Below, one piece after another: positions 1 through 51,369 of a stretch of 64,000 bases of DNA (within the stretch, counting starts at the first letter, position 1; each line of letters starts with the position of its first letter). The DNA lies in NCBI GenBank assembly GCA_002269645.1, contig NIVC01000552.1:1-64000 (forward strand). The letters are read 5' to 3'. The position numbers were made by a program, and so were the translations under genes. The notes below the pieces were generated by a model. It was not told the DNA's origin, made no database searches, and saw only the letters and a list, made by a program, of their open reading frames with translations. The DNA comes from Macrostomum lignano (taxonomy: Eukaryota).

Positions 1-200
1 TTGGTGCTTGTTAGACGAATTGATGCTTGTTGGACCGAATTGATGCTTGTTGGACCAAATTGGTGCTTGTTGGACCAAATTGATGCTTGTTGGACCAAAT
101 TGGTGCTTGTTGGACCAAATTGATGCTTGTTGGACCAAATTGGTGCTTGTTGGACCAAATTGATGCTTGTTGGACCAAATTGGTGCTTGTTGGACCAAAC
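1..200. repeat. 20-bp tandem repeat (ttg[g/a]tgcttgttggaccaaa)
   Basis: About 10 units, alternating ttggtg/ttgatg variants; runs off the window start. Confidence 0.95.
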
Positions 201-751
201 TAAATGCCGCGGCCAGCCCAGCTTACCATGGACAAAAGCTCCATACTACAAAATTCATACTACATCCATACTATCCATACTACAAACGTATCTAGGATTA
301 AATTCTATGCTCGTAGGCCCAAATAGGCTTCAAAAAGCTATATTTAGCCCGCAAAACTGTTATTGTAGCTTCGCCGACAATCCCATTGGAGTGATAAACC
401 CTAATTAAAGATTAATTAATTAGTAATTAGTCTTCTGATGCTTTGCTAAGCATCACTGTTTTTTCTCTCATTTTCCCATATCGAAGCTGTCCCACTTAAA
501 GTTGAACACATCTCATTGAATTCTAAGGATTAGGTAGTCCACACACACACTACCATACCGCTTGCTAATTTACCTTTACAATTAGCTATGTTTTTAACGA
601 ATTTTCAGGCGCTCGAGCCATACCGCAAAGGTCTGTAAAGTCAACAGATTTGTACAAAAAATGCGCAACTTTTTCAATCAACTTATTTATTATCAGCAAC
701 TATGGCTATGGATTGTCAACTTAAATTCAACATAGTTAAATCAATTGGCAG

Positions 752-1329
752 CTTTCACGAAGTCGCGAAGATTGCAGTGAATCTATGCAGAACCTTGTAC
801 ATTGTTTGGCCAATCAGTACCACGACTTTCTATGCAATTGTCAGTCTTGCGACGATGTCCTCCAATCTTGCACTAGCACGCATAGTTCCAAAGACGAATT
901 CTGTATTCTAATTAAGAGGTATTCTTATTGTAATGAATCGGTTTTGCCATCAAGACTTGGTCTTCCAGAGAAATTTGAAAATGGTAATTCTGCTCGGCCT
1001 ATTATTCCAAGCAATGACCTCCCGTTGCATAACCGCTCTTTAGCGTTTGGAATTCAACCGGTTGCTATCGCTTTCGGCTTGTTGTTTGTCTCGTTTTGCT
1101 TTGCCTTGCTAGTATTCGACTCAATCGATCTAGTCAACTTCTGTCCTTTAAAATTCGGTATTGGGCTACTCAATGCTACAGTGGCGAAGACGTTTCTGCA
1201 GTTGAGTCTGGAGATACTCAAGCTATTGATGCACAGTCTCTGTCTCAGTCGGATGCGGCGTCACCGTCAACTAAACTCACCTCCGAAGGTTGGCATGAAC
1301 GGCTGCTGAAACTGCAACGGAAGCTCTAA
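752..1329 (+). CDS. 8-Cys type I membrane protein, paralogue 1 (5' end unresolved; 1-bp frameshift at T4 1094-1097)
   Basis: Ectodomain EDC-x9-C-x9-CxCxxC-x6-C-x10-C-x8-C. Adding one T gives TM VAIAFGLLFVSFLLCLASI followed by RLNR and an S/D/E-rich tail ending at 1329. Candidate phase-0 acceptor ggcag| at 751. Confidence 0.6.
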
Positions 1330-2009
1330 CTTCCGATCAGGAACCGCAGGTTGCGGCGCCAGTTATACCTTTGCCTCTCTGTGCGCAGAATGGTGATGAA
1401 CAGTTTGACGCGATTAGGCGGCCTGAGCAACAGTTCATGCAAAGCAAATTAAACCCTGTCAAATTTTAATCATCGTTGGTTGAACATTCCTCAATAGGAA
1501 TGCACAATAGTGAAGAGTGCACAATATTTTCGCCACGCCAAAGGCTAAGTGCTTCGAAGCCTATTTTAACGCTTATTATCAGCAAGTTTCTTGTCGCTAG
1601 TTTTCTAGATCGCTTTGATATCCAGCAGATGATATCAAGCAATTTAATGAGTCACTCCGAGAAAAATAGATGAAAAAAACAATAAATTGAGTCGTCGTTC
1701 CGGTTGGCAACCTGAACCCAAGACTCTCGGATTAGCAATGAAACAATTCATATATGTAAACGTTTACTAAGGAATCTTATATTCGTCACACAGTTGAGCT
1801 TGTCATTGTCATTGGTACTATAACGGCATCGTTTGTACCCATCAGTAAAAGCACATATTAAGCTTGCCAGTTATATTTTAAGGGCCTAACCTCTTTCTAT
1901 CAGTACTACGAAGATCATCTAGCGATCAATAGCGGCTTCAAAAGTTTATTGGATCGAAAAAGCAATACTAGAGCGAGTCCCTGCTGGAAGACAGAATATT
2001 TCACAACGT

Positions 2010-2170
2010 CCTCCCCGCAGAGACTGTCTTCCTGTCTCCCAGAAACTTTCCTCGGAGACTGGCGTCCCCCCCCTCCGAGACTGTCGCCCCTTCCAAGACT
2101 AGCGCCCCCCCCTCCCAAAGAGACTTGGCCCCATAGACTGGCGCCCCCTTAAATGTGGCCCTCAGAGACT
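2010..2170. repeat. Degenerate GC-rich repeat (gagactggcgcccc core)
   Basis: Same core motif as the 2575-3305 array. Confidence 0.7.
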
Positions 2171-2574
2171 AGCAGGCAAGCAAATTTTGAGCAGTTTTTG
2201 CTATAAAAATCAGTACGCTCTGTTGCTAACAGTGGTTCTCATATCCATACTCCTTCGTATAATACGCTCGTATATAGTTTTAGATTGCTCTATTGTCAAA
2301 TCACCTCCAAACGCTTGTTTAAATCAGTTGATATCCCTTTTTGTGCCCCTCCTTCCATTTTTCCCTTTTTACAATGTGCCTATTTACATGTACGCCTTTA
2401 TTTAACTGTTAAAATTACAATGTCGTTCGCATAATTGTGTTTTATTTGAACGATAGGCAGCTCAGACAAAGACGCAGAATGATTAGTCAAGCCGGCCCCG
2501 GGACACACTAGCTAGCCCCCTTCGGGTAAAGTGCTACCGCAATCTCAAAGTCTTAAAATTATTTACAGTCGCAA

Positions 2575-3305
2575 CTGGCACCCCCGCCCCGCAGAGACTG
2601 GCGCCCCTTCTCATACAGAGATTGGCGCCCCTTCTCATACAGAGACTGGCGCCCCTTCTCATACAGAGATTGGCGCCCCTTCTCATACAGAGACTGGCGC
2701 CCCTTCTCATACAGAGACTGGCGCCCCTCCCATACAGAGACTAGCGCCCTCTCCCATACAGACTTGCGCCCCCTCCTATACAGAGATTGGCGCCCCCTCC
2801 CCCGCAAAGACTGGCGCCCCCTCCCATACAGAGATTGGCGCCCCCTCCCCGCAAAGACTGGCGCCCCTCCCATACAGAGACTGGCGCCCTCTCCCATACA
2901 GACTGGCGCCCCCTCCTATACAGAGATTGGCGCCCCCTCCCCCGCAAAGACTGGCGCCCCCTCCCATACAGAGATTGGCGCCCCCTCCCCCGCAAAGACT
3001 GGCGCCCCCTCCCATACAGAGATTGGCGCCCCTCCCCGCAAAGACTGGCGCCCCCTCCCATACAGAGATTGGCGCCCCCTCCCCCGCAAAGACTGGCGCC
3101 CCCTCCCATACAGAGATTGGCGCCCCCTCCCCCGCAAAGACTGGCGCCCCCTCCCATACAGAGATTGGCGCCCCCTCCCCCGCAAAGACTGGCGCCCCCT
3201 CCCATACAGAGATTGGCGCCCCCTCCCCCGCAAAGACTGGCGCCCCCTCCCCGCAAAGACTGGCGCCCCCTCCCATACAGAGACTGGCGCCCCCTCCTCA
3301 CAGAG
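2575..3305. repeat. GC-rich ~23/24-bp minisatellite with ~47-bp dimer (gactggcgccccctcccatacagagattggcgccccctccccgcaaa)
   Basis: Direct inspection; it explains all the overlapping low-complexity ORFs here. Confidence 0.95.
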
Positions 3306-4187
3306 ACCGTTTCGTGTTGTTTTAACTATATTGTATTGCTTTAAGGTTTTGCTATCGAAGAATCATCGCCAACCGCATATTCAAATCAATAGTTATCTTT
3401 TTATCTTTTGTCTTCTAGCTCACAATGCGCTCTTTTACATTGTAGAAATTTACAAAATTTGTTATAATATTTAATAATAGCGCCCCTATTTTACTGTTAA
3501 TCGCGCATTATAACTTCTCTCGCTGCAATAATAAACGTTTTTGTTTCTCTAAAAATTTATCATATTTATTAGCATCTGCGCCAGATAAATTCCGCTACTT
3601 TACTTTCAATTGCGTAGTTACCAGCTAGCAGTGAATCAACTCGCACTTGGGCTTTGGGGAAGGGGGGGTTCTGTTAAAATAAGCATCGTTCCACTTTAGA
3701 GTTCAGTTATTACGCTATATAAGTAGAAGAAGTTTGTATTATATTATAGCATCACCCGCTTCGTTTTTAAGCTTACAGCTAGACCAAGTGTTCTATTTTT
3801 AGTAGCGGGGACCATGTCTAATAGTTAATTTTAGAATAGAGAGCTGTTTCTTTTAGAGATGCTGTTGACAAAGTGTCTTCGAGGGAACTTCGTAAGCAGT
3901 TTTTTCTGTTATTACTACTGCGTCTTCACCGCTCTTCTCTGCCGCTGCAACTCCTATATAGTCTCTACCTCTCTGGCTCGCTCTTACCAACGCAATAGCT
4001 ACAGATTATATGCTAGGCTCATCATTTTTGTTAGAAACCTTTTCACTTCACCCAGCCTCTCGTTCTGTCTACTCTTCAGCCGTCGTCAACATTAACAACA
4101 AGAAGAGCTTTTGTTGAGGCTTTTTCTTTCGTCAACGCAAATGTCCAATACGTGACGGCTTAGCGGCAATTGATTGATTTAAACAGC

Positions 4188-4745
4188 ATGGATCAACGAA
4201 TGCTACTAAGCATATTGTTGCTGTTCCTGTTGTCAAGCAACCGAGCCAGCGGTTTTGTAGACACGCCTAAGAACCAGTTAGATTGCTACCTCCCGCCAGA
4301 ATGCGATTTGGATCGGCAGTATTACAATGGCGACTGTATGTGTGTCGATTGCGAGCCATTGGTAAATGAATATTCGTGCTATTCAGCATTGATTCCTCGA
4401 CAACAACTTTTACAAGAATGTCGAGACGCACTGACGCTGGGCTATTGTCAGGCAACTATGCGAAATGTAAGCTTATCGCCAGTGGCAGGCGCTACCACTG
4501 AGCGTATTCAGCATACTTCAACTGAAATGTCAACCACGACTGCGACGTTGTCTTCATCAATAACAGTTCAGCATCCTTCGAACTCCAATATGGCTTTGAT
4601 ATTCAGTTTATTAGCCTGCTTTTTTGCATTGGCCATACTATTTACGGTCATAATAATCCGGTTCTGCGCTCGCGGCCGGAGCGGAGTCGGGCGTCAGGGT
4701 GGATTAAACGAGTCAGTTGAGTCTACTGATGAACTCGATGAGTAA
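4188..4745 (+). CDS. 8-Cys type I membrane protein, paralogue 2 (185 aa, single exon)
   Basis: ATG at 4188; signal peptide MDQRMLLSILLLFLLSSNRASG; Cys domain DCYLPPECDLDRQYYNGDCMCVDC...C...C-x8-C; Ser/Thr stalk; TM MALIFSLLACFFALAILFTVIII; basic stop-transfer residues; acidic tail. Confidence 0.85.
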   Translation: MDQRMLLSILLLFLLSSNRASGFVDTPKNQLDCYLPPECDLDRQYYNGDCMCVDCEPLVNEYSCYSALIPRQQLLQECRDALTLGYCQATMRNVSLSPVAGATTERIQHTSTEMSTTTATLSSSITVQHPSNSNMALIFSLLACFFALAILFTVIIIRFCARGRSGVGRQGGLNESVESTDELDE

Positions 4746-4764
4746 GTAATATCTCTTATCTGAC

Positions 4765-6450
4765 AATTAACCTATCTAAGTCAGATAACAACCATATCTG
4801 ATATTTAACCTACCTGAGTCAGATAGCAACCGTATCTGATAGTTAACCTACCCGAGTCAGATAACAACCATATCTGATATTTAACCTACCTGAGTCAGAT
4901 AACAACCGTATCTGATAATTAACCTACCCGAGTCAGATAACAACCATATCTGATATTTAACCTACCTGAGTCAGATAACAACCGTATCTGATAATTAACC
5001 TACCCGAGTCAGATAACAATCATATCTGATAATTAACCTACCTGAGTCAGATAACAACCATATCTGATATTTAACCTACCTGAGTCAGATAACAATCATA
5101 TCTGATAATTAACCTACCTGAGTCAGATAACAATCATATCTGATAATTAACCTACCCGAGTCAGATAACAACCATATCTGATATTTAACCTACCTGAGTC
5201 AGATAACAACCGTATCTGATAATTAACCTACCCGAGTCAGATAACAATCATATCTGATAATTAACCTACCTGAGTCAGATAACAACCATATCTGATATTT
5301 AACCTACCTGAGTCAGATAACAATCATATCTGATAATTAACCTACCTGAGTCAGATAACAATCATATCTGATAATTAACCTACCCGAGTCAGATAACAAT
5401 CATATCTGATAATTAACCTACCTGAGTCAGATAACAACCATATCTGATATTTAACCTACCTGAGTCAGATAACAACCGTATCTGATAATTAACCTACCTG
5501 AGTCAGATAACAATCATATCTGATAATTAACCTACCTGAGTCAGATAAAAATCATCTCTGATATTTAACCTACCTGAGTCAGATAACAATCATATCTGAT
5601 AATTAACCTACCTGAGTCAGATAAAAATCATCTCTGATATTTAACCTACCTGAGTCAGATAACAATCATCTCTGATAATTAACCTACCTGAGTCAGATAA
5701 CAAACATCTCTGATAGTTAACCTACCTGAGTCAGATAACAATCATCTCTGATATTTAACCTACCTGAGTCAGATAACAATCATCTCTGATAATTAACCTA
5801 CCTGAGTCAGATAAAAATCATCTCTGATATTTAACCTACCTGAGTCAGATAACAATCATCTCTGATAATTAACCTACCTGAGTCAGATAACAAACATCTC
5901 TGATAGTTAACCTACCCGAGTCAGATAACAATCATCTCTGATAGTTAACCTACCCGAGTCAGATAACAATCATCTCTGATATTTAACCTACCTGAGTCAG
6001 ATAACAACCGTATCTGATAATTAACCTACCTGAGTCAGATAACAATCATATCTGATAATTAACCTACCTGAGTCAGATAACAATCATATCTGATAATTAA
6101 CCTACCCGAGTCAGATAACAATCATCTCTGATAATTAACCTACCTGAGTCAGATAACAATCATATCTGATAATTAACCTACCTGAGTCAGATAACAATCA
6201 TATCTGATAATTAACCTACCTGAGTCAGATATAACAATCATATCTGATAATTAAACTACCTGAGTCAGATAACAATCATCTCTGATAGTTAACCTACCTG
6301 AGTCAGATATAACAATCATCTCTGATAGTTAACCTACCCGAGTCAGATATAACAATCATCTCTGATAATTAACCTACCTGAGTCAGATAACAATCATATC
6401 TGATAATTAACCTACCTGAGTCAGATAACAATCATCTCTGATAATTAACC
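4765..6450. repeat. 38-bp minisatellite, about 44 copies, with internal palindrome
   Basis: Unit ttaacctacctgagtcagataacaatcatatctgataa; inverted repeat tcagata-N7-tatctga in each unit. Confidence 0.97.
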
Positions 6451-7024
6451 CACCTGCAGAGAGCAGTCCCCCATCGTGGAGCACTCCGGGGGCACCGACA
6501 GCGGCTGCAACGGCCCCTGTAGAACCTGTCAGCCAATAAAGTGCCCAGACCAGTCCAGCAGATATTTATCCAAAGGCGCTCAACGTTGCTCGAAGTGGTT
6601 AAGCGAGAACTGCTCAGTACAAGACGGTGCCTCATCGGAGGCTCTCGCGCCAAACATACCAGCGTCTAGCATGTCCGTGTGCTCAATCGTTAGGCAGTTG
6701 AATCCCCTGCTGCATCTGTCTGCGCCTATGCTGGCGCCTGCGGCTACTAATGCTTATGGGTTAAAGTGCCGCGACCAAATCCTATCAAAAGTGTGATCCT
6801 ACATCATGTGACATGTCTGTTTATGTGCATAATCAGCTCCGCTTATTATATTGTTCTCAGACTGACTTTGTAGTTTTTCTGTCTGCTCACTATCTTTTCA
6901 ATAATTAAATCATTCAGGTTTTTTGCTGTATTTGAAATGGTTACTTTTTGTACTTTAAACTGAGCTGAAATCTCCTACATATGATATTCTGAATCTTACA
7001 TGAAATCTCTAATCCCACATGAAG

Positions 7025-7400
7025 TCCCAATTATCTTTCATGAGATTTCTAATCTTTCATATGAGATCTCGAATCTCTCGCATGAGATCTCTAATCTCAC
7101 ATAAAGTCTCTAATTGCTCATGAGATTTCTAATCTTTCATATGAGATCTCAAATATCTCATGAGATTTCTAATCTTTCATATGAGATCTCAAATATCTCA
7201 TGAGATTTCTAATCTTTCATATGAGATCTCAAATATCTCATGAGATTTCTAATCTTTCATATGAGATCTCGAATCTTCCGCATGAGATTTCTAATCTCAC
7301 ATGAGATCTCTTATCTCACTTGAGATCTCTAATCTCATATGAAGTCTTAATTATCTTTCATGAGATTTTTAACATTTCATTTGAGATCTCTAATATTTCA
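7025..7400. repeat. Degenerate 20/40-bp tandem repeat (catgagatttctaatctttcatatgagatctcaaatatct)
   Basis: Several near-exact 40-bp copies at 7120-7260. Confidence 0.85.
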
Positions 7401-7829
7401 CATAAAATCTCAAAGCTATTCTATCATATATCCCGGATCTCGCATAAGATGACAATATTCATAGAAATAAAGTTATATAAAGTAGGAATTAATATTTCTA
7501 ACCACAATAATGTACTCTAGTACAAGACCTATAGTAATATTTCAATCAGTTGCCCTGCCAATGGATTTTTTAAAGCAGATCTCTGTGTCTCTGCTTTTCT
7601 ACACCGATGCCAACAGTACTCAGCTGTCATCAATGTTTTTGTCATGCTCATAGTAATTGCGTGATTCAACTGACGCATTTTGTTATACCGACACTGACAT
7701 TAGTAATGTACAGACATCTGTCTTTGTATCTTTGTACAGTATTGCCTTGCATTCCTTTCTTCATTAGCGAAATTATTGATTGTTTTCTTTCAGTTGATAC
7801 TGAATGCAATCTTATTTGTTTGGCTTTGT

Positions 7830-8003
7830 GACTGACTGACTGACTGACTTGAGTGAGTGGGTGATGACTGACTGACTGACTGACTGACTGACTGACTGAC
7901 TGACTGACTGACTGACTGACTGACTGACTGACTGACACTGACTGACTGCCTGACTGACTGACTGACTGACTGACTGACTGACTGACTGACTGACTGACTG
8001 ACT

Positions 8004-8054
<51 letters not shown>

Positions 8055-8085
8055 TGACTGACTGACTGATTGACTGACTGACTGA
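7830..8085. repeat. (ACTG)n microsatellite
   Basis: Direct inspection. Confidence 0.98.
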
Positions 8086-8751
8086 AGGCTCCTTGTCGTA
8101 ATAATTTATTTAGTGTACTCAAACTTTAACGAATATATTATAGTCTTTTAATCAACGAAAAATTACAGATAATGCCGATTGTTTAAACAATTCTACAATA
8201 TATTTAAATTTTGCTTCTTTCTTTTTACATTTCTACTTATTAGTAGTGTAAATTCCGTTTGACTTCTGCTTTATCTCAAGAGCCTTGACAAACGTCTATT
8301 GCGAGTTTAAATATAAATTTTACAATAGTTTTAATTCTCTGCTTAGCCACGCACTTTACTACTAACGTGCCGCGAGTTCATGTTTTACTGCGCTGGTTAA
8401 TCTCTCAGGCAAAAAAGACGAGTTTGCCAACTTGAAATTTTCTCACATTTGTATCTTTTTAGCAGTTGCCATTTCAAACAAAATATACATCCATGCACCT
8501 GCCAGATTGTAAATTTTAGTCTATTTTTGTAGTCATTTACCGGTTTTTTGACTTTACACTTTTTATTTGGCTACTTGTGAGTAGGATAATCGCAGTTTTT
8601 TTCAGTTAATATGCAGTTTTATCAGTTATCAGTTTCTAATTCATCTGCCACCTTTGTCGCTCTTTCATGATACGATTTCGCTATGAATTACTACTTTTAA
8701 GAGTAGTAGCGGCATCTTACTATTTTAAATCTTCCCTAATCAGCTGATCAG

Positions 8752-10923
8752 ATGCATCTTCAAATTCAGCTGCTAATTGCCGCTGCTGTTATTATCTGTC
8801 GGTGTTTCGGCAATGATCAGCAGGATGTAAAGGTGAATAAATTTCAAAACTGGACCTATTTATAATATAGCTGTTCCTGTTGTCAAGCAACCGAGCCAGA
8901 TGTTTTGTAGACACGCCTAAAAACCAGTTAGATTGCTACCTCCCGCCAGAATGCGATTTGGATCGGCAGTATTACAATGGCGACTGTATTTGCGTCGATT
9001 GCGAGCCATTGGTGATGGAATATTCGTGCCATTTAGCATTGAATCCTCGGCAACAACTTTTTCAAGAATGTCGGGACGCACTGACGCCACTGGGGGGGTG
9101 GGACAAGTGCCCCCCCCCAGTAGAAGCAATGGGGGGACATCCCGATGCTTGTCCATTTGTCCCCCTCCCACCTTGTTGATCCGTTATGGAAATCAATAGT
9201 CAATTTGCTTCAGGGCGCCAAAATGAGTGCCTGCAGCGCCAAAATGAGTGCCTGTGGCGCCAAAATGAGTGCCTGCGGCGCCAAAATGAGTGCCTGCGGC
9301 GCCAAAATGAGTGCCTGCGGCGCCAAAATGAGAGCATGCGGCGCTAAAATGAGTGCCTGCGGTTTCAAAAAAATCAATGACAACACCGATTCGGAAATAA
9401 TGTACATTTAGAATTCTCGGCTTTTGTCCCCCCCACCATAAAATCTATGGCGACGCCCCTGGACTCGGGCTTCTCTTTTGACTTTTTAACGACTCAAACG
9501 ACTGTAATGCGACGGAGAGGCGACTGTTAAGTCGAGTCACGAGCGCATATCACATGAGTTGCCGTATCTTTAAAGAGTCGCAAAAGTCGTCTAATAGTCG
9601 TTTTTGTGTTTGACATTTTACTAACTCAAGTAGACTAAATATAGAGTTTTATGAACGCGAAGTGCGATTCTAATTCATAAAGTGAGTCAGATGCAAGGCT
9701 CTGGCCCGCCTCAGATACGACTCTAAGGCCCTGGAGTCACTATTAAAGAGTCCACTATTTGACGAATTGTACCGTGACATGTAGTCGTTTTAGATTCACT
9801 TCTTTTCCGATTTTACCTGTGTTTACCTGCAACGACTCTGAAGCGACACATGACTTTTTTTCGGGTGACTTTTCTCTCCTCGATGCCTCCTTATGACTGA
9901 AAAGATGTCATTATTTAGAGAATTTACGCGATGCGAAAGACCGAATTATAGGGGAGCCGTAGCCCAGCGGTAGCGCAGCTGCTCTGGTGTGCCAGCGACC
10001 CAGGCTCGATTCCAAGTGCAGTCACATTAATTTGGGGCTGAATTGGAATCTCAGCTTGGCTCTGCTCGTGCAATTAACGGCCTTGAGAGCCAACCCCCAA
10101 GACACTGTGAAGTGTACATGCCTAAATATAAATAAAGTCGTGGGCCGCTGTACACTTCTGTGTGAGTGTGTGCCTGCGTACGTATCCGCGCGCTTGTATG
10201 CCTGCTCAGGGGAGTCGGCGGAATGGGCAGTAATGCCTCTCGCCGGTTGTGTGCCTATGTCGCTTAAAGTGCGCCAGGGTGCACACAACCCCCCTGCCTC
10301 TAATAAAAAAAGACCGAATTAAAATTCAGCTCTAAAAATAGGCTCGTTAAATAATTTTTCGATTGCAGGTGCCGAAAAACTTCCAAAATGACTGCAAGAA
10401 TATCAGAAAAGTTTATTGTGCAATTGAATCTGGATATTTCTATTACGATTCTTACTGCGCCTGCTGGCCTTGTCCAACTCACTATATGGCAATTTATAAT
10501 GCTAAAAAGTGCACAGCTTTTAAAGAATCTCGCGCCTGTTTCAACACCACAGCTATGCGGCAGTGTCGGAATCCTGTAGATAATAGTACTGAAGGCGAAA
10601 AACTTGCTAAATCGGTTATTCAAAAACAGGATATTTCGATTTCGAACATCATCGGATACGTGGTGCTCTGTCTTGTAGTCGCTGCTATTATTTGTATCGC
10701 ATTCTGGTTTGTCTGTCGTAGATGGACGCGTCTCAGGAGTCAGAGCAGCTTCAACGAGTCAAGCGACCAAGAAAAAAGGCGTTTAAATAGCAAGGACGGG
10801 CCTCAGCCTACATTTCAGCCCAATAATCCGTCAATTGATACTGTTGATGAGACGTCCACTACGCCTAACATACCGGATAATATCGAGAAGTCAAGTTCCG
10901 ATGCGAATAGTTACGACATTTGA
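8752..10923 (+). CDS. 8-Cys type I membrane protein, paralogue 3 (exons 8752-8832 and 10369-10923; 211 aa)
   Basis: Exon 1 encodes signal-peptide-like MHLQIQLLIAAAVIICRCFG-NDQQDVK with donor aag|gtgaat (phase 0). Acceptor gattgcag| at 10368 (phase 0). Exon 2 has the 8-Cys domain, TM IIGYVVLCLVVAAIICIAFWFV, RRW and a polar tail. Confidence 0.75.
8871..9087 (+). pseudogene. 217-bp intronic copy of the paralogue 2 ectodomain (4221-4437)
   Basis: Colinear with no indels, 14 mismatches (~93.5% identity), domain cysteines within the copied segment retained; truncated at 9087 by a repeat element. Confidence 0.85.
9088..9461. mobile_element. Partial non-autonomous DNA transposon (possibly hAT-like) carrying a 21-bp array
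   Basis: Right end ...ggcgacgcccctg (reverse complement CAGGGGCGT...); G/C-run subterminal blocks gggacaag / cttttgtcccc at both ends; ~7 x ggcgccaaaatgagtgcctgc at 9212-9362; left terminus not intact. Confidence 0.45.
9475..9800 (+). repeat. Dispersed GACTC/GAGTC-rich repeat, copy A
   Basis: Shares gactttttaacgactcaa, cctca[a/g]atacgactcta and ccgtgac..gtcgttttaga blocks, in the same order, with 18700-19040. Confidence 0.7.
9949..10308 (+). mobile_element. tRNA-derived SINE, family A, full length with 13-bp TSD
   Basis: A box tagcccagcgg (9960), B-box-like ggctcgattcc (~10003), A-rich tail; TSD aaagaccgaatta at 9936-9948 and 10309-10321. Confidence 0.9.
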
Positions 10924-12434: not shown

Positions 12435-12495
12435 CTACCAATCAACCAATCGATCTGTCTGTCTACCACTCTACCCGTCCATCTATCTATCTATG

Positions 12496-12564
<69 letters not shown>

Positions 12565-12567
12565 GTG

Positions 12568-12606
<39 letters not shown>

Positions 12607-12704
12607 TTATCTATCTTTCTATCTATCTATCTATCTATCTATTTATCTATCTATCTATTTATCTATCTATCTATCTGTCTGTCTATCTATCTATTTGTCT
12701 GTCC

Positions 12705-12736
<32 letters not shown>

Positions 12737-12739
12737 GTG

Positions 12740-12771
<32 letters not shown>

Positions 12772-12774
12772 CTT

Positions 12775-12834
<60 letters not shown>

Positions 12835-12869
12835 TTATCTATCTATCTATTTATCTATCTATCTATCTG

Positions 12870-12910
<41 letters not shown>

Positions 12911-12983
12911 TTATCTATCTATCTATCTGTCTGTCTATCTATCTATTTGTCTGTCTATCTATCTATCTATCTATCTATCTGTG

Positions 12984-13061
<78 letters not shown>

Positions 13062-13332
13062 CCAATCAACCAATCGATCTGTCTGTCTACCACTCTACCC
13101 GTCCATCTATCTATCTATGTATCTATCTATCTATCTATGTATCTATCTTTCTATCTATCCATCTATCTATCTTTCTATCTATCTATCTATCCATCTATCT
13201 ATCTTTTTATCTATCTTTCTATCTATATATCTATCCATCTGTTTATCTATCTATCTATCTATCTATCTATTTATCTATCTATCTATTTATCTATCTATCT
13301 ATCTGTCTGTCTATCTATCTATTTGTCTGTCC

Positions 13333-13364
<32 letters not shown>

Positions 13365-13367
13365 GTG

Positions 13368-13399
<32 letters not shown>

Positions 13400-13467
13400 C
13401 ATCTATCTATCTTTCTATCTATCTATCTATCTATTTATCTATCTATCTATCTGTCTATCTATCTATC

Positions 13468-13524
<57 letters not shown>

Positions 13525-13527
13525 GTG

Positions 13528-13569
<42 letters not shown>

Positions 13570-14014
13570 CCAATCAACCAATCGATCTGTCTGTCTACCA
13601 CTCTACCCGTCCATCTATCTATCTATGTATCTATCTATCTATCTATCTATCTCGCTTCGCTCGCTCTTTCTCGCTATCTACTATCTATAGCCAGGACCTG
13701 CACCGGAGCGGTTACGAAAATTAGATTTCTCGGTAGTTGCACGTACTCTTTTGCACTACTTGAGTAGTCTGATTTTCGTTCGGCATGGCTGGTTCCAGCA
13801 GGTAGTTCCTCTGGATAAAAGCGCTTACCGCGCCCATTGGCTTTCCAGCTGCCTTAATCGTTTCCGGTGATCTTGTGTGCGTGCTTTCAGCGTGATTGGC
13901 TGCGGCAAGAGAGCTCGAAAGAGCTCGCTTCGCTCGCTCTTTCTCGCTATCTACTATCTATCTATCTATCTGTGTATCTATCTATCTGTCTATCTATCTA
14001 TCTATCTATCTGTG

Positions 14015-14320: not shown

Positions 14321-18428
<4,108 letters not shown>

Positions 18429-23672: not shown

Positions 23673-35915
<12,243 letters not shown>

Positions 35916-38664: not shown

Positions 38665-39517
38665 ATGCTGAAACTCTGCGCTCTGCTGCTCTGCTGGGCA
38701 AACGCTGCTGCGGTGCCGCCTCAACCGTTGGAGTTTCGCCACCTCGGCTGCTACGTGGATGGCGCTAGTGGCAACCGAGATCTTGTAGGACTGGAGGGGG
38801 TGAAAAAGTTCGGACAGTTTGAGACTCACCCCAATGTCCCAGGATTTGTTTTCGATGTCGCCAGGATGACACTGCAACTGTGCAGCCAGATGTGCTCTTA
38901 CGGCCGATTTCGCTACTTTGGAGTTCAGGCCGGGGGCTACTGCTGCTGCGGCTCGGCCTACGGATCGCACGGCATCGCACCGGCTGGCAACTGCAGCAGA
39001 GCTTGCAGCGGAAACTCGTCTCAGATTTGCGGTGGAAGATTTAGAAATTCTATCTACGAACTGACTTACTCACCAAGTAAGCATTCTGGATTAACGCAGC
39101 TCGTACAAGCTTAAACACAAGCTAATTTAGCTAAGGACGACTTTATAAAAACGCTGTGTTCTAAAGTAGTCCTTAAATGAGCGGTTTTACCAGCAATATT
39201 CGAATAACTCTGAGCGATAAAAATATCAAATAAAATATTGCCATTCCATATTTTTAACCAAACCTTCTGCAGTCGATCCGGTGATGCCGAAACTGCCCGT
39301 GACGTCTCTGCCAAACATCACAGCCTCCGCGAGCTCCGTCACTCACCGCAGCATCGCAGCCAGCAGCGCAGTTGAATGCGCCACCATCTGCTACGGCAGC
39401 CCGGACTGTCAGGGCTGCGCCTTCGCAGCTTCGAGCCGCATGTGCCGCCTGCTGAGATTCGCCGCTGTGCCCGCTGAGGTGGCCAGCGAGGCTGAGTGGA
39501 TCTGGATGAAGCTGTGA
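38665..39517 (+). CDS. Secreted WSC-domain + PAN/Apple-like protein (exons 38665-39076 and 39273-39517; 218 aa)
   Basis: Signal peptide MLKLCALLLCWANAAA; WSC pattern LGCY..MTLQLCSQMC..YFGVQAGGYCCCG..C..ACSGN..CGG...IY; phase-1 intron; second domain SAVECATIC..CQGC..MCRL. Confidence 0.85.
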
Positions 39518-45795: not shown

Positions 45796-46854
45796 ATGGA
45801 AGCTAATGACGTAGTAGAAGCACTGGCTGAAGGCATTAGAGACAGGCTAGACATTAGGAAACATATTAGGATCCAAAAGTACACGCCTAATCAGGATATA
45901 GACGTGTGGATTCAGGCTTTTGAGCAGAGGTGTATCGCAGATGAGATACCCCCAGCTGAGTGGAAGAATGAGCTACTGTCTAACCTAGATGTTCAGTCAG
46001 CGTTCGCTATCGTGACAAGGCTAAATTTAGATCCTAATCTAGCATACGCAGACTTTAAAGATAGGCTAATCGAGCGGTTCACGCATGTAGGTAGTGCTCA
46101 AGAAGCTAGGGAAGAGTTCCGTAGTAGGTTCCAGTGCAAAACTGAAAGCACTGATGACTACGCTGAGAAGCTAACAGAGCTAGCATGCAGGGCGTTTCCC
46201 CATCTAACTAACGATCAGAGACAGGAAGAGGTGGTGGAACAGTTCATTAGAGGTGTTAGGGTTGCCCCAGAGACTAGAGAGAAGCTACTGCTAGCTCAGG
46301 TAAACTCGCTTCAAGAGACACGTCGAGTCTTGCGACGTATAGAAATGGCGTACGCTATGTCTCGCCGAGGTAGAGACCCGCAGCAGTGTAAGGCAACTGG
46401 AGGAGAAGAAGCTGAGAATAGCTTGAAGGAATTGGTCCGCAAACAGGGTGAGGCGCTAGAAAACCAGCAGAAGGTGCTTCAGGAGTTACTCCGACACCAC
46501 CAGAGTGTTGAGCAAAAGGTCAAGCAGCAGCAGCCGTCAGGTCAGCAGCAGCAAGGCCAGAATCAGCAAGGGCGTCCCCCAGTAAAGTGCAACAGGTGTG
46601 GCAAGCTAGGTCACGTAGCTAAGAATTGTAGACAGCCACATCCGCAGAACCAACTTAGGTACCCGGCTCAGCAGCAGATGCAGTATCAGCAGCCGCAGTA
46701 TCAGCAGCCGCAGTATCAGCAGCCGCAGTATCAGCAGCCGATGTACCCACAGCAGCAGATGCAGCCGCAGTACCCGCAGCCGCATTACCCTCAGCAGCAG
46801 AATTCGGGAAACGGAGTAGACGGAAGCGTCGGAGGCAACGCTTTCCAGCAGTAG
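45796..46854 (+). CDS. gag: Gag (352 aa) with CCHC zinc knuckle and QQPQY tail
   Basis: CNRCGKLGHVAKNC at ~46588-46629; retrotransposon gag-like core. Confidence 0.95.
   Translation: MEANDVVEALAEGIRDRLDIRKHIRIQKYTPNQDIDVWIQAFEQRCIADEIPPAEWKNELLSNLDVQSAFAIVTRLNLDPNLAYADFKDRLIERFTHVGSAQEAREEFRSRFQCKTESTDDYAEKLTELACRAFPHLTNDQRQEEVVEQFIRGVRVAPETREKLLLAQVNSLQETRRVLRRIEMAYAMSRRGRDPQQCKATGGEEAENSLKELVRKQGEALENQQKVLQELLRHHQSVEQKVKQQQPSGQQQQGQNQQGRPPVKCNRCGKLGHVAKNCRQPHPQNQLRYPAQQQMQYQQPQYQQPQYQQPQYQQPMYPQQQMQPQYPQPHYPQQQNSGNGVDGSVGGNAFQQ
46806..46846 (+). promoter_or_regulatory. -1 programmed ribosomal frameshift signal (G GGA AAC plus downstream hairpin)
   Basis: Heptamer in the gag frame at 46806-46812; the -1 frame is open into pol; stem ggaagcgt/acgctt(t)cc begins 9 nt downstream. 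Confidence 0.8.
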
Positions 46855-49800
46855 ATCCCTCACAGTCTGTAGCCTCACAACCTGTAAATATCAGCGATAA
46901 TTTTTCTGTAAATAGTGAATTGAATTCTTCAGTGTATAACAGCAGGCATGCGCAAACATTTAATCAATCATTTAATCAGCCGAACATTTACTCTCAGCAC
47001 TTTTCAAACGCACCACAACAGCAACCTTATTCTAGCAAGCAGCAGCTAAAACAACCAAAAATAATTGAACAAACTAAAAAACAAAGTTACGATCCGTACA
47101 TCACTGGCAGCATTTTAAATAAGGAAATAGTTTATCTATTAGACACTGGCAGTAATAGAAATATCTTAGGACGCGAAACCTGGAAGCATCTTTTCACTGG
47201 CAAGAATAGGCATCTAATTAAGCATTGGGACAATAGAATCGTTTCCTTTATGGAAGAGCCTATTCCAATTAAGGGTTTCGTAGTTGTTAAGGCAACATTT
47301 GGCGATTTCAGAGAAGAAGTTGAGTTTCTCTTATGTGACGCAGATGTAGACAATGTAATAGGTGTGACGTTTGTCCAAAAATATTGTAATACCATTGACT
47401 TCGATGCAGGAATGCTAACCATGAAACAAGGAACTAGAATTCCGCTTCGATCAACCAGAGCTAAGCCTCAGGTTAGGAGAATCTATGTCGCAGAAAAGAC
47501 GACAGTTCCAGCCAATAGTTCAGGATTAGTCAAGGTCAGATTAGCAGCAGGTAGTGAAACTAATTTCGGAGTGCCATCAGTTGTTGAGCCACTCAGATCA
47601 GGATTAAAGACTAGAACAGAGAAGGTAACTGTAGTGCCAAGTTTAGTAACTCTAAGACAAGGGGAAGCTTATTTAGAAGTGATTAACACCAGTTCACAGG
47701 AAGCTAGAGTACCAGCATCAGCATTAGTTGGGATGGCCAAGCCACTCTTAGCTAGCGAGCTTAACTATCTGAAGGAACAGCCAGAAGAAGAGCAGAATAA
47801 GAACACGCAGTCTTGCGGAAGCAGAGAAAAGATCAGCCAGGTACAGGACAAGTCAGAAGACTGGATTAGTGAGATTAACATAGGAACTGAACTGACTCAG
47901 GAACAGAGACAAAAGGTGATCGAGGTCGTCAAGGAACATTCAGCAGCTTTCTCGCAGCACGAGTTAGACTTAGGCAGAACGCATTTAGTCACACATGAAA
48001 TTATCTTGAAGGATAACAACCCAGTTCAGATACCAGCTAGGAAGATTCCACCTCATTGGATCAAGGAGGTAGATGAGCAGTTAGATCTCATGTTGGCTAG
48101 AGGCATAATTAGGCCTAGTTACTCGCAGTACTCGACTCCATTAGTCATAGTACCTAAGAAAGACGGTTCGCTGAGATTAGTTAACGACTATCGAGCACTA
48201 AACAATAAATCGGAGTACTTTCCGTATCCAATAACTAATATCAATGAAACATTTTCATGTCTCCATGGAGCCAGTCAATTCTCTACGTTAGATCTATTTT
48301 CGGGATATATCAGATAGCTCTTAGGGAAGAAGATAAGTGCAAGACTAGCTTTCCAACTTTACATCGAGGCTCGTTTGAGTACGAAGTATTGCCAATGGGA
48401 TTGCAAGGAGCTCCAGGAACTTTTCAAAGGTGCATGAACTTAGTTCTTAAGGACATTGCACAGAAGTTCGCCATAGCTTACTTAGACGATGTAATAGTTT
48501 ATAGTGCAGACTTTGAATCGCATTTAGAACACCTGAAAGAAGTGCTCAAGAGACTAATACAAGCTAACATGAAACTAAAGGCTAAGAAATGTCACCTTTT
48601 CAAATCAGAATTACAATATCTAGGACACGTCATAGGCAAAACAGGAATTAAGAGAGATGCGTCGAAATTAGAATCAATTAGGAACTGGCCGAAACCTAAA
48701 TCTGTGACAGAGCTTCGAAGTTTTCTCGGACTCTGTAATTACTATAGAAAATTCGTTAGAGATTTTGCCGAGGTAGCAGCACCACTCTGTGAGTTAACTA
48801 AGAAGAACATCAAATGTATCCAGGACAAATGGACCAGGATTCATGATGAATGCTTCGAATTGTTGAAGGAACGGATGTGTTCCGAAGAAGTGCTTGCTTA
48901 CCCAGAGTTTAATACAGACCCCCAAGTTTATTTTGTGTTAGACACTGATGCATCAGATGTCAGAATTGGGGCGGTCTTGAATCAAGTTCAGAGCGACGGC
49001 ATAGAAAGACCGATCGCGTATTATAGTCGGAAGATGAGGCAGTCAGAAACTAGATATCCGATTACGAGGAAGGAGCTTCTAGCGATTGTTGACTCGCTGA
49101 AGTACTTTAGATTTTACCTCGTAGGAAAACATTTTAAGGTGCGCACTGATCACAATGCCCTAACCTGGTTGCTTCGCCAAACCGAACAGACAGGCATTTT
49201 AGGTCGTTGGATCGAAAGACTTTCCGAATTTGATTTTGAGATAGAACATAGGAGTGGCCCTAAACATGTGAATGCTGACGCTCTATCCAGGATCCCTGAT
49301 CCTCAACCGGAAGAGATGTCCCCACATGCCAGGTCGCTAAGCTGTAGGGCAACTGTGAATACAGACCCAGCATCAGCTTGTACTGTCAGCTCAGGCAATT
49401 CCGCGTTAGCTGAAACCTGTAGCTCGAGCAGTGGAGTTCCGTCATGCTGTTCGTCACAAGACACTGTCACGAACCGACACAATACTCCGATCTTTAGTAG
49501 CAGTAGGCTAGACAATAGACAGGGACAGGAGCCTAAAACCGGAAATCCGCCTGCATGCAATGCCCTGCTCAGTGACTATCTCCGTAGCCCAGTTCGCCGT
49601 GACCAATTGATCGCAGCACAGCTAGCCGATCCGGCGGTAGGCTTTGTTAGAAATTTAATTGAGAATGACTCGCCTAAACCGACATTTCAAGAACGACTAG
49701 AGTTAACCCACGACTGTAGGAACCTCTTAGGTTACTATGAGTTGCTCAGAATTGAGGACGGCGTACTCAAAGTAGACTTATCTATGGGGCAGACTGATCC

Positions 49801-51369
49801 AAAGGTAGTGTTGCCCAAGTCTCTGGATAGTGAAGTCTTTCACCAATTCCATGATTCACCGTTAGCGGGACACCTAGGTCGAGATAAAACTTATCAGAGA
49901 ATTAAAATTCGATTTTGGAGGCCAGGATTAGCAACAGCAGTTGAACGCTACGTAGCCAAATGTAAATCATGCCTAGAAAGCAAAACTAGAAGAAGAATTA
50001 AGGCACCAATTCAGAACTATCCTGTAGTCGAACCGTTCGGTAGATTGCACATAGATCTAATAGGACCTATTGGCCAAACTAGCAAATCAGGAAACAAATA
50101 TGTACTTTCAGTCATAGACAGCACTAGCAAATTTCCATTCGCATTCGCAATTAGGAATCAGAAGGCTAAAACAGTTATCAAAATTCTACAAGAACGAGTT
50201 TTCGCTGATTTTGGGATTCCACAATGGATTCACACAGACCAGGGAACACAGTTCACTGGTAGGGCCTTTAAGAAATTTTTAGACCTCTATGGCATTAGAC
50301 ACACTCGAACAACTAGTTATCATCCGCAGAGCAATGGCTTAGTAGAAAACCTTAATAAGCAGATTAAATCAATTCTCACCTGTTTACTGGAGAAGGAGCA
50401 TTCCAACTGGGACGTTCTGTTGCCAGGTTGCATAACAGCTCTGAGAACCAGCACGCACACTGCCACAGGATTTAGTCCGCACTATTTAGTCTTTGGACGA
50501 GAGGCCAGAATGCCCTGTGACAATGAGCTGAACGAGCCAAAGCAGTTTCAGGACCTGCCATCTTATGTCCAGGAACATCAGCAGAATCTGCAGGAAGGCC
50601 AAGAACTAGCGAGAAAGAGATTAAAATTAGTGCAACAAAACCGTGAGCAGGAGTACTCTAATAAGCCTAAGCCGAAAACATTGCCTGTAGGAAGCTTAGT
50701 ATTTATTAATAATCCAGTAATTGCTAACACAGAGGCTAACAAATTTCACAGAAAACAAAGGGCAGTTTACGAAATTGTAGAACAATTATCAGAAGTAGTC
50801 TTTAAGATTAGACCAGTTACCAAAAATAAGAAGGCTAGAAAGGAAGAACTTATTATGCATAGGGATAATTTAATGAAGTACCGCAAGCAGATTATCAGGA
50901 AGAAGAAGCTAGTACTAAGCCAAAAGAGCAGAGGAAACAATACGATAGGGAACAGTTAGCCAATAGCCAGCCGAATGTGTACAATGACTCAGAAAGTGAA
51001 GACGAGTACGAAGACGCAGTGCAGTTTATGCCAGTGCAACGTCAAAATAATGAGCAGTTTATGCCAGTGCAAAATCAAAATAATGAGCAGTTTATGCCAG
51101 TGCACAATCAAAATAATGTGCAGTTAGTGCCAGATCAACAAGTGCAGCATCCAAATAATAATCAAAATAATTTAGTAGGTGTACAAGGAGTTATGCCGGT
51201 ACAATTAAATAATAACAATAATAATTTAGGGATTAATTTAGAAGCTAGGCCAGCGAGAGAGCGTCATGCTCCAGATAGATTAACAGTCAGGCCAAATCAG
51301 AAAAGTTATGTGCAGAGGATAGCGGAGTTGTTTAACCCATTTAACCTCTTGCAGCCAAAATCTCAATAA
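46806..51369 (+). CDS. pol: Pol (PR-RT-RNaseH-IN), broken by two 1-bp deletions (~48307 and ~50881)
   Basis: LLDTGS (47142), YLDD (48479), TDAS, HHCC zinc finger, IDLIGP/TDQG/E integrase core; terminal RPARERHAPDRL motif in ORF 50977-51369. Confidence 0.92.

What the first reader, a model, noticed from the sequence alone, without database searches (positions are those of the whole stretch)
752..10923. Cluster of a highly diverged 8-Cys single-pass receptor family (TNFR-like topology)
Seen: three loci encode small type I membrane proteins with almost no residue identity but one cysteine scaffold, D-C-x5-9-C-x9-12-C-x-C-x2-C-x6-12-C-x8-13-C-x8-C. The invariant DC start, CxCxxC core, final C-x8-C spacing and an aromatic patch (QYH/QYY/FYY) before CxCxxC are shared. 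Each has a stalk, a TM helix, basic stop-transfer residues and a short polar tail without a death domain. Paralogues 2 and 3 share (L/F)NES in the tail, and paralogue 3 has an S-D-Q-E string fitting the (P/S/A/T)x(Q/E)E TRAF-binding pattern. Established: small single-CRD receptors with this topology exist (Fn14, BCMA, Drosophila Grindelwald), but their Cys spacing is not identical to this. Inference: a lineage-specific, fast-evolving tandem family of immune or signalling receptors, possibly undescribed.
Basis: partly seen in the sequence, partly recalled or inferred. Interest (0 to 1): 0.8.

Follow-up and report, generated by a model that had tools for sequence, protein, structure and literature searches.

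The report
Flatworm cluster of small 8-cysteine receptors
A stretch of the flatworm Macrostomum lignano genome carries a tandem cluster of small single-pass membrane proteins with one shared 8-cysteine outer domain; they look like stripped-down TNF receptors, but that kinship could not be proven with the tools available.

Summary
The window is Macrostomum lignano contig NIVC01000552.1:1-64000. It encodes three same-strand type I membrane proteins (P1 661-1469, P2 4188-4745, P3 8752-8832 + 10369-10923). Each has the scaffold C-x5-9-C-x9-12-C-x-C-xx-C-x6-12-C-x8-13-C-x8-C: 3 hits against 0.008 expected.

- A truncated P2 copy (8871-9086) lies in P3's intron.
- A further member, P0, lies upstream on a sister contig.
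- P3's signal peptide is a separate exon.
- P1 carries four 1-bp homopolymer deletions in this contig but is intact in both sister copies, so these are probably assembly errors.
- P0, P2 and P3 have RNA-derived gene models. P1 has none.

Homology is solid only for P0-P1. P2 and P3 join through scaffold, architecture and tandem position.

An exhaustive HMMER search of 1.84 billion proteins found nothing real outside M. lignano. The TNFR reading remains a hypothesis. For it: the architecture, a C-x4-5-Y hairpin, UniRef names ("TNFR-Cys domain-containing") and marginal hhalign matches (P 0.017-0.04). Against it: no Pfam or PDB sequence match, no Foldseek match, and low-confidence AlphaFold models. 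The cysteine spacing differs from Grindelwald, BCMA and Fn14.

Verdict: a real, lineage-restricted receptor-like family of moderate interest.

The parts
661..1469 (+). P1 gene (270-aa ORF in the sister copies). In this contig it is interrupted by four 1-bp homopolymer deletions after positions 720, 755, 1114 and 1299.
   Evidence: tblastn of the intact L001 ORF splits into 4 pieces. The three-copy alignment shows the window is identical to L001 except for TTT>TT, CC>C, TTT>TT and CC>C. No gene model exists in any copy.
770..931 (+). P1 8-Cys ectodomain: DC-x9-C-x9-C-x-C-xx-C-x6-C-x10-C-x8-C
1061..1117 (+). P1 transmembrane helix (VAIAFGLLFVSFCFALLVF). The basic RLNRSS tail follows only after the frame shift at 1114.
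4188..4745 (+). P2 gene, single-exon form, 185 aa: signal peptide 4188-4253, 8-Cys domain 4281-4448, Ser/Thr-rich stalk 4449-4592, TM 4593-4658, 28-aa tail with LNES and an acidic end 4659-4742
   Evidence: It is 97% identical to GenBank PAA65776.1 and 100% identical to the copy in L002.
4741..6459 (+). Optional intron of P2. The donor GA|GTAAGT overlaps the stop codon. The body is the 38-bp x 44.6 tandem array. The acceptor is ctgcag at 6459.
6460..6796 (+). Alternative last exon of P2. It adds 111 cytoplasmic residues and has no Pfam domain. It is used in the RNA-derived model on the sister contig.
8752..8832 (+). P3 exon 1: signal peptide MHLQIQLLIAAAVIICRCFGNDQQDVK, followed by a GT donor
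8871..9086 (+). P2b: truncated copy of P2 (end of the signal peptide to the 7th Cys, about 94% nt identity) inside P3's intron. It lacks an ATG, the 8th Cys and a TM. It is absent from the L001 copy.
10369..10923 (+). P3 exon 2: 8-Cys domain 10390-10566, TM 10648-10713, 69-aa tail 10714-10920 with FNES and SDQE (10762-10773)

Best explanation
The region is part of a four-gene tandem array (P0 lies just off the contig; P1, P2 and P3 are in the window) that arose by local duplication in the Macrostomum lineage. Each gene encodes a small type I membrane glycoprotein: a signal peptide, one roughly 55-residue ectodomain held by four disulfides, an N-/O-glycosylated stalk, one TM helix, and a short non-enzymatic tail without a death domain. 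The most likely mechanism is that of the minimal single-CRD TNF-receptor-superfamily members (BCMA, TACI, Fn14, Drosophila Grindelwald). In that model the beta-hairpin between Cys2 and Cys5, which carries the invariant Tyr, docks into a groove of a trimeric TNF-family ligand. M. lignano has at least 6-10 such ligands. Ligand-driven clustering of the short tails would then recruit adaptors such as TRAFs. Shown here: gene structures, topology, the shared scaffold, tandem origin, lineage restriction, and RNA-derived models for P0, P2 and P3. Inferred: homology or analogy to TNFR cysteine-rich domains, the ligand, and the signalling route.
For: Scaffold and topology. Tandem same-strand order and three genomic copies. 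P0-P1 homology has z=17; P0-P2 and P0-P3 have z about 4. UniRef names P0 (A0A267EXW8) and the P2+P3 fusion model (A0A1I8IZQ0) 'TNFR-Cys domain-containing protein'. hhalign places Cys2-x4-Y...C-x-C-xx-C on BCMA's Cys8-NEYFD...C-xx-C hairpin (P=0.017) and on the A1 module of canonical TNFR1/CD40/NGFR domains (P=0.04). Both AlphaFold models put a beta-hairpin exactly there, with the highest local pLDDT (about 70). The P2 model adds two helices, which is the element order of the Grindelwald ectodomain: beta-hairpin plus two helices, 8 Cys, 4 disulfides (PMC8024323). M. lignano has 4 genomic plus 6 further TNF ligand sequences but only one canonical NGFR-like receptor was reported (PMC7519573). A preprint counts 6 Eiger, 16 Wgn-like and 1 Grnd-like proteins there. 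The gene models derive from RNA-seq (PMC5730564).
Against: No Pfam TNFR_c6, BCMA, TACI or BaffR hit at E<=10 for full proteins or isolated domains. No PDB sequence hit for the profile or for single domains. A TNFR-domain HMM scores the domains at 0-3 bits. hhalign against Grindelwald gives nothing. hhalign probabilities are 1-3%. AlphaFold confidence is low (pLDDT 62.8 and 57.0), the two models disagree on the C-terminal half, and Foldseek against PDB finds nothing. The cysteine spacing matches no known TNFR module pair. The TRAF-type SDQE motif is at chance level. UniRef leaves P2 alone and the L001 allele of P3 'Uncharacterized', so whatever match underlies the name is borderline.
Confidence: 0.4

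Rival explanations
1. An orphan, Macrostomum-restricted cysteine-rich membrane glycoprotein family that is not homologous to TNFRs. On this reading the TNFR-like spacing is convergence of a small disulfide-rich domain. The proteins would act in cell-surface recognition or adhesion (epidermal, gland or gamete) or bind an unrelated ligand.
For: All profile and fold searches for known families failed. The 8-Cys spacing is unlike any TNFR module pair. Mucin-like Ser/Thr stalks and short acidic tails are generic. There are no detectable relatives outside the species. P3's domain differs at 6 non-synonymous and 0 synonymous sites between copies, as seen in recognition proteins.
Against: UniRef's 'TNFR-Cys domain-containing' name for two entries. 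Two marginal profile alignments both land on the same hairpin. The overall architecture equals Grindelwald, BCMA and Fn14. The organism has an expanded TNF ligand set that needs receptors.
Confidence: 0.4
2. TNFR-like binders that do not signal themselves: membrane decoys or co-receptors that titrate or present ligand. This applies mainly to P2, whose unspliced form has only a 28-residue tail.
For: P2's tail is 28 aa and has no TRAF-type motif. A stop codon overlapping a consensus splice donor gives short and long isoforms.
Against: P0, P1 and P3 have tails of 69-117 aa. The tail of P3 is perfectly conserved between copies (0 differences in 61 codons) while the domain varies, which suggests the tail is functionally constrained.
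Confidence: 0.1
3. Some members are dead copies. P1 would be a pseudogene and P2b a gene fragment, so the 'family of three' in the window is effectively two working genes.
For: P1 has four frame-breaking deletions in this contig, a weak signal peptide, and no gene or protein model in a 15-billion-protein collection. P2b lacks a start codon, the 8th Cys and a TM.
Against: P1 is an intact 270-aa ORF in both sister copies with dN/dS 0.19, though that rests on only 5 differences. All four window defects are 1-bp homopolymer deletions within 1.5 kb of the end of a PacBio/Canu contig, and at the 5 sites in this stretch where L001 and L002 differ from each other the window matches L001. This is the signature of consensus error.
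Confidence: 0.3

Closest known systems
Drosophila Grindelwald (TNFR; PDB 6ZSY/6ZT0)
   Same: A small type I protein with a single N-terminal domain of 8 cysteines (4 disulfides), no death domain and a short adaptor-binding tail. Its ectodomain is a beta-hairpin plus two helices, the same element order as the (low-confidence) P2 model. An acidic residue precedes Cys1 (SRDC in Grnd; SREDC in P1).
   Different: Grnd's spacing is C-x4-C-x6-C-x6-C-x2-C-x3-C-x11-C-x3-C (sequence verified). Here it is C-x5-9-C-x9-12-C-x-C-x2-C-x6-12-C-x8-13-C-x8-C. hhalign finds no similarity and Foldseek does not retrieve it.
Vertebrate single-CRD TNFRs BCMA, TACI-CRD2 and Fn14
   Same: The same overall architecture. 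The hairpin C-x4-(E/Q)-Y-(Y/F/H)-D...C...C-xx-C resembles BCMA's C-SQNEYFDSLLHA-C-IP-C (P0: C-SENEYYDVH-C-T-C-VH-C). hhalign aligns these 19 columns with P=0.017. P1 even has D-F-L at the hairpin tip.
   Different: Those receptors have 6 Cys, not 8. The DxL motif is absent from P0, P2 and P3. There are no Pfam BCMA, TACI or BaffR hits. The hhalign probability is only 2.6%.
Canonical platyhelminth TNFR (NGFR-like, four A1-B2 domains plus a death domain; Bertevello 2020, PMC7519573)
   Same: A TNFR-type A1-like start (Cys, then an aromatic residue 5-6 positions on), type I topology, and the same organism.
   Different: That receptor has four Pfam-detectable domains and a death domain. The proteins here have one non-canonical domain, no death domain and no Pfam hit.

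Membership tests
TNF receptor superfamily (TNFR/NGFR cysteine-rich domain) | Domain recognised by the curated family profile (Pfam PF00020 TNFR_c6) | tested here: not met
   No hit at E<=10 for full-length P0-P3 or for the isolated domains. My own HMM built from 10 verified TNFR1/CD40/NGFR domains scores them at 0-3 bits.
TNF receptor superfamily (TNFR/NGFR cysteine-rich domain) | PROSITE TNFR-Cys profile match (PS50050) | not testable with these tools
   The profile is not available here. UniRef names P0 (A0A267EXW8) and the P2+P3 fusion model (A0A1I8IZQ0) 'TNFR-Cys domain-containing protein', but leaves P2 alone and the L001 allele of P3 'Uncharacterized'. From my own knowledge of UniProt's automatic naming, such names derive from a PROSITE match; if so, the match is borderline.
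TNF receptor superfamily (TNFR/NGFR cysteine-rich domain) | A1-type module (Cys, aromatic residue 5-7 positions on, second Cys) followed by C-x2-C and two further Cys (the A1-B2 pattern, as recalled from PROSITE PS00652) | tested here: inconclusive
   Cys2 to Cys7 of every member come within 1-4 residues of the recalled spacing limits, but none fits exactly (direct reading of A3). hhalign aligns Cys2-x4-Y to the A1 start with P=0.04.
TNF receptor superfamily (TNFR/NGFR cysteine-rich domain) | TNFR-type fold with its disulfide connectivity | tested here: inconclusive
   AlphaFold pLDDT is 62.8 and 57.0. The hairpin is reproducible, the C-terminal half is not, and Foldseek against PDB finds nothing at E<=0.001.
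TNF receptor superfamily (TNFR/NGFR cysteine-rich domain) | Binds a trimeric TNF-family ligand | not testable with these tools
   This needs binding assays or multimer prediction with the M. lignano ligands reported in PMC7519573.
Grindelwald-type TNFR | Single 8-Cys domain built from an X2 hairpin and a C2 helix-loop-helix with Cys-x3-Cys ... Cys-x3-Cys | tested here: not met
   The 8 Cys are present, but the last four are spaced x6-12, x8-13 and x8, not x3, x11 and x3. hhalign: no alignment beyond 4 columns.
BCMA / TACI / BAFF-R group | Hairpin-tip DxL ligand-binding motif in a 4-6-Cys domain | tested here: not met
   Only P1 has D-F-L. P0 has D-V-H, P3 has D-S-Y and P2 has N-G-D. All have 8 Cys, not 4-6. 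The hairpin similarity is marginal (P=0.017).
Death receptors | Cytoplasmic death domain | tested here: not met
   No Death-domain or other Pfam hit in any tail or in the alternative P2 exon. Tails are 28-117 aa.

The most novel reading that the evidence does not exclude
This could be a previously unclassified 8-cysteine ectodomain family with its own fold (a beta-hairpin plus a disulfide-stapled helical pair). It would be confined to Macrostomum and transcribed from an operon-like tandem array. It would supply the missing receptors for the flatworm's expanded TNF ligand set, reached either by extreme divergence from, or by convergence on, the Grindelwald/BCMA design.
Probability: 0.25. Interest if true: 0.6.

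Novelty: new variant of a known kind. Interest (0 to 1): 0.4.

Why it matters
M. lignano is a transgenic, RNAi-tractable regeneration model. It has many TNF-family ligands, but the literature describes only one canonical TNF receptor. If these small single-domain proteins bind those ligands, they would show that minimal Grindelwald/BCMA-grade receptors exist in flatworms. They would also give a tractable system for TNF/JNK signalling in wounding and regeneration. In addition they would illustrate how quickly such domains drift beyond the reach of sequence profiles. If they are not TNFR-related, they are an orphan receptor-like family of local interest only.

Tried and rejected
- Pfam scans of the full proteins and isolated domains: only weak TM or low-complexity hits. 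The Cmc1 twin-Cx9C hit for P1 (E=0.014) was rejected because the protein is secretory/TM.
- Word-indexed searches of 5.8 billion proteins with P2 and with a 4-member profile: only M. lignano's own entries.
- Exhaustive HMMER search of 1.84 billion representatives: two non-self hits (P0006, P0007), rejected as repeat/low-complexity artefacts after a Pfam scan.
- PDB sequence searches with the profile and with single domains: nothing relevant.
- Two AlphaFold runs and two Foldseek-PDB searches: low confidence and no matches.
- hhalign against BCMA/TACI/Fn14, against Grindelwald and against canonical domains: marginal or nil.
- Leave-one-out HMMs: P2 and P3 are not recovered significantly.
- dN/dS between genomic copies: too few differences.
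- TRAF-motif statistics: at chance level.
- Full-text search for the Mlig gene identifiers: no paper.
- The first unfiltered shuffle control was misleading because Cys-rich microsatellite translations inflated it, so I redid it with a complexity filter.
- I did not use the third large protein search. The profile search had already covered every member's words.
Full report
**Source and context**

The best protein hit for the central ORF is a hypothetical protein of the free-living flatworm Macrostomum lignano (97% identity). A look-up of the P3 protein returned a locus whose first 20,923 bases are identical to the window. The window is therefore NIVC01000552.1:1-64000 of assembly GCA_002269645.1 (Mlig_3_7).

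The same assembly holds two further copies of the locus:
- L001, from NIVC01001619.1, is 92-97% identical.
- L002, from NIVC01000221.1, is about 98.5% identical.

This fits the known redundancy of this hidden-polyploid genome (PMC5730564). The window is very repeat-rich.

**Checking the observation**

It hits their counterparts in the sister loci and nothing else.

With low-complexity fragments removed, 1000 within-ORF shuffles give 0.008 expected hits against 3 observed. An unfiltered shuffle gave 0.65, but only because microsatellite translations such as (SVCL)n are a quarter cysteine.

When trimmed to the domain, MAFFT aligns all eight Cys and one Tyr as invariant (A3). The C-x-C-xx-C core and the final C-x8-C are exact in every member.

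A held-out test is available. A gene 4.5 kb upstream of P1 on the sister contig fits the same pattern with E-C instead of D-C. This is P0 (L001 1673-2545, GenBank PAA65777.1).

**Gene structures**

P2 (4188-4745) is a single exon with these parts:
- a good signal peptide (MDQRMLLSILLLFLLSSNRASG);
- the 8-Cys domain;
- an NVS sequon and a Ser/Thr-rich stalk;
- a 22-residue TM helix;
- a basic stop-transfer and a 28-aa tail.

Its TAA stop overlaps a consensus donor (GA|GTAAGT). The RNA-derived model on the sister contig (PAA65776.1) splices there, across the 38-bp x 44.6 tandem array, to an exon at 6460-6796. That exon adds 111 residues with no known domain.

P3 has a separate signal-peptide exon (8752-8832, GT donor) and a second exon from the cag acceptor at 10369 to 10923. 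The resulting 211-aa protein is identical to GenBank PAA81060.1/PAA87695.1.

P1 spans 661-1469. Both sister copies carry an intact 270-aa ORF. The window copy is identical to L001 except for four 1-bp deletions in homopolymer runs, after positions 720, 755, 1114 and 1299. These lie within 1.5 kb of the end of a PacBio/Canu contig. I read them as consensus errors rather than decay, but this is an inference.

P1 has a weak signal peptide, homologous to P0's. It has no gene or protein model anywhere.

A fourth element, P2b (8871-9086), is a 216-bp copy of P2 running from the end of the signal peptide to Cys7, at about 94% nt identity. It sits in P3's intron and replaces about 385 bp of unrelated sequence found in L001.

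**Is it one family?**

- P0 and P1 are clearly homologous (z=17 against shuffles, and z=7.8 even with the Cys positions fixed).
- P0-P2 and P0-P3 are moderately supported (z about 4; 4-5 of 1000 shuffles reach the observed score).
- P1-P2, P1-P3 and P2-P3 are not significant pairwise.
- Leave-one-out HMMs do not recover P2 or P3 (E=0.16 and 0.44).

Membership of P2 and P3 therefore rests on other evidence:
- the exact partial spacing;
- a conserved Pro six or seven residues before Cys1;
- the sequon after Cys8;
- identical architecture and the same strand;
- immediate adjacency.

Tandem duplication followed by strong divergence is by far the simplest account.

Between genomic copies, dN/dS is 0.19 for P1, 0.40 for P2 and 0.84 for P3. 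The P3 domain shows 6 non-synonymous and 0 synonymous differences, while its 61-codon tail shows none. This is suggestive, but the counts are too small to test.

**Relatives elsewhere**

Two word-indexed searches of 5.8 billion proteins returned only M. lignano entries. An exhaustive HMMER profile search of 1.84 billion cluster representatives returned the family itself plus two repetitive proteins. Pfam showed those two to be low-complexity artefacts. The family is lineage-restricted as far as public proteins go. Other Macrostomum genomes could not be searched with these tools.

**What kind of domain is it?**

Negative results:
- No Pfam family, including TNFR_c6, BCMA, TACI and BaffR.
- No PDB sequence match.
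- Two AlphaFold models of low confidence (pLDDT 62.8 and 57.0), with no Foldseek match.
- No hhalign similarity to Grindelwald. I verified its sequence against 6ZSY.

Positive but weak results:
- UniRef names P0 and a WormBase fusion model of P2+P3 'TNFR-Cys domain-containing protein'. It leaves P2 alone and the L001 allele of P3 unnamed.
- hhalign aligns Cys2-x4-Y...C-x-C-xx-C to the ligand-binding hairpin of BCMA (CSENEYYDVHCTCVHC against CSQNEYFDSLLHACIPC; P=0.017, probability 2.6%).
- hhalign also aligns the same element to the A1 module of canonical TNFR1/CD40/NGFR domains (P=0.04). I had verified those sequences against PDB chains.
- Both AlphaFold models place a beta-hairpin on exactly this segment, with the best local confidence.
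- The P2 model continues with two helices. That is the element order reported for Grindelwald's ectodomain: beta-hairpin, two helices, 8 Cys, four disulfides (PMC8024323).

The cysteine spacing nevertheless differs from Grindelwald, BCMA, TACI and Fn14. The family works like, but cannot be filed as, a member of any of these.

**Tails**

No tail has a death domain.

| Member | Tail motif found |
|---|---|
| P3 | SDQE |
| P1 | SDQE |
| P0 | PxQxxD |
| P2 | none |

Shuffled tails carry a (P/S/A/T)x(Q/E)E match 14% (P3) to 45% (P1) of the time. A shared 4-mer between the P1 and P3 tails arises 12% of the time. The TRAF reading is a lead, not evidence.

**Biological context**

One study reported a single NGFR-like TNFR with a death domain in M. 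lignano, together with ten TNF ligand sequences (PMC7519573). A later preprint that used custom HMMs counts 6 Eiger-like, 16 Wengen-like and 1 Grindelwald-like proteins in this species. Its held supplement gives no accession numbers, so I cannot tell whether these genes are among them.

The Mlig_3_7 gene models are built only from RNA evidence. Genes that share a prefix come from clustered transcriptional units, which are often polycistronic precursors. P0 (Mlig030720.g6) and P2 (Mlig030720.g8) share a prefix. This hints at co-transcription of the array, but I could not verify it.

**Verdict**

The best explanation is a Macrostomum-restricted tandem family of minimal, single-domain receptor-like glycoproteins. 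They most plausibly operate like BCMA/Grindelwald-grade TNF receptors (confidence about 0.4). An equally weighted rival is that they are an unrelated orphan cysteine-rich family.

The proteins already sit in GenBank and UniProt as hypothetical or auto-named entries, but I found no specific description of them. Interest is moderate.

Noticed in passing
window 4741-6796: P2's stop codon TAA overlaps a consensus splice donor (GA|GTAAGT). The optional intron is almost exactly a 38-bp x 44.6 tandem array. The downstream exon adds 111 residues of unknown function, so short-tail and long-tail isoforms are possible.
   Followed up: partly
window 8871-9086: A truncated copy of the P2 domain lies inside P3's intron and is absent from the L001 copy. 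It follows an 'atatag' and is in frame with P3 exon 1, so it could act as a cryptic exon giving a two-domain protein. No evidence for its use was found.
   Followed up: partly
window 720, 755, 1114, 1299: Four single-base homopolymer deletions, relative to both sister contigs, are concentrated near the contig start. They are probably long-read consensus errors that survived polishing.
   Followed up: yes
L001 1673-2545 (sister contig, upstream of the window's start): A further family member, P0 (290 aa, PAA65777.1), closest to P1. UniRef names it 'TNFR-Cys domain-containing protein'. It shares the transcriptional-unit prefix Mlig030720 with P2, which hints at polycistronic transcription.
   Followed up: partly
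window 14380-18428: A DEAD-box RNA helicase gene (annotated product 510 aa) lies directly downstream of the cluster and is conserved in all three copies.
   Followed up: partly
window 27639-32491: Exons of a TRPM-type cation channel (SLOG/LSDAT_euk domain, E=1.5e-23), followed by tandem-repeat-derived ORFs.
   Followed up: no
window 38665-39111: An ORF with a signal peptide and a WSC carbohydrate-binding domain (E=5e-13).
   Followed up: no
window 45796-50956: A Ty3/gypsy-type LTR retrotransposon with long open gag (zinc knuckle) and pol (RT, RNase H, integrase) reading frames. It appears recently active. I noted the domains only and did no reconstruction.
   Followed up: no
window 1-199, 2574-3297, 7829-8085, 9214-9362, 12481-13652 and many further sites: Extreme density of micro- and minisatellites (20-, 48-, 38- and 21-bp units, (TGAC)n, (ATCT)n). 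They produce long spurious ORFs in several frames and inflate naive shuffle controls.
   Followed up: partly
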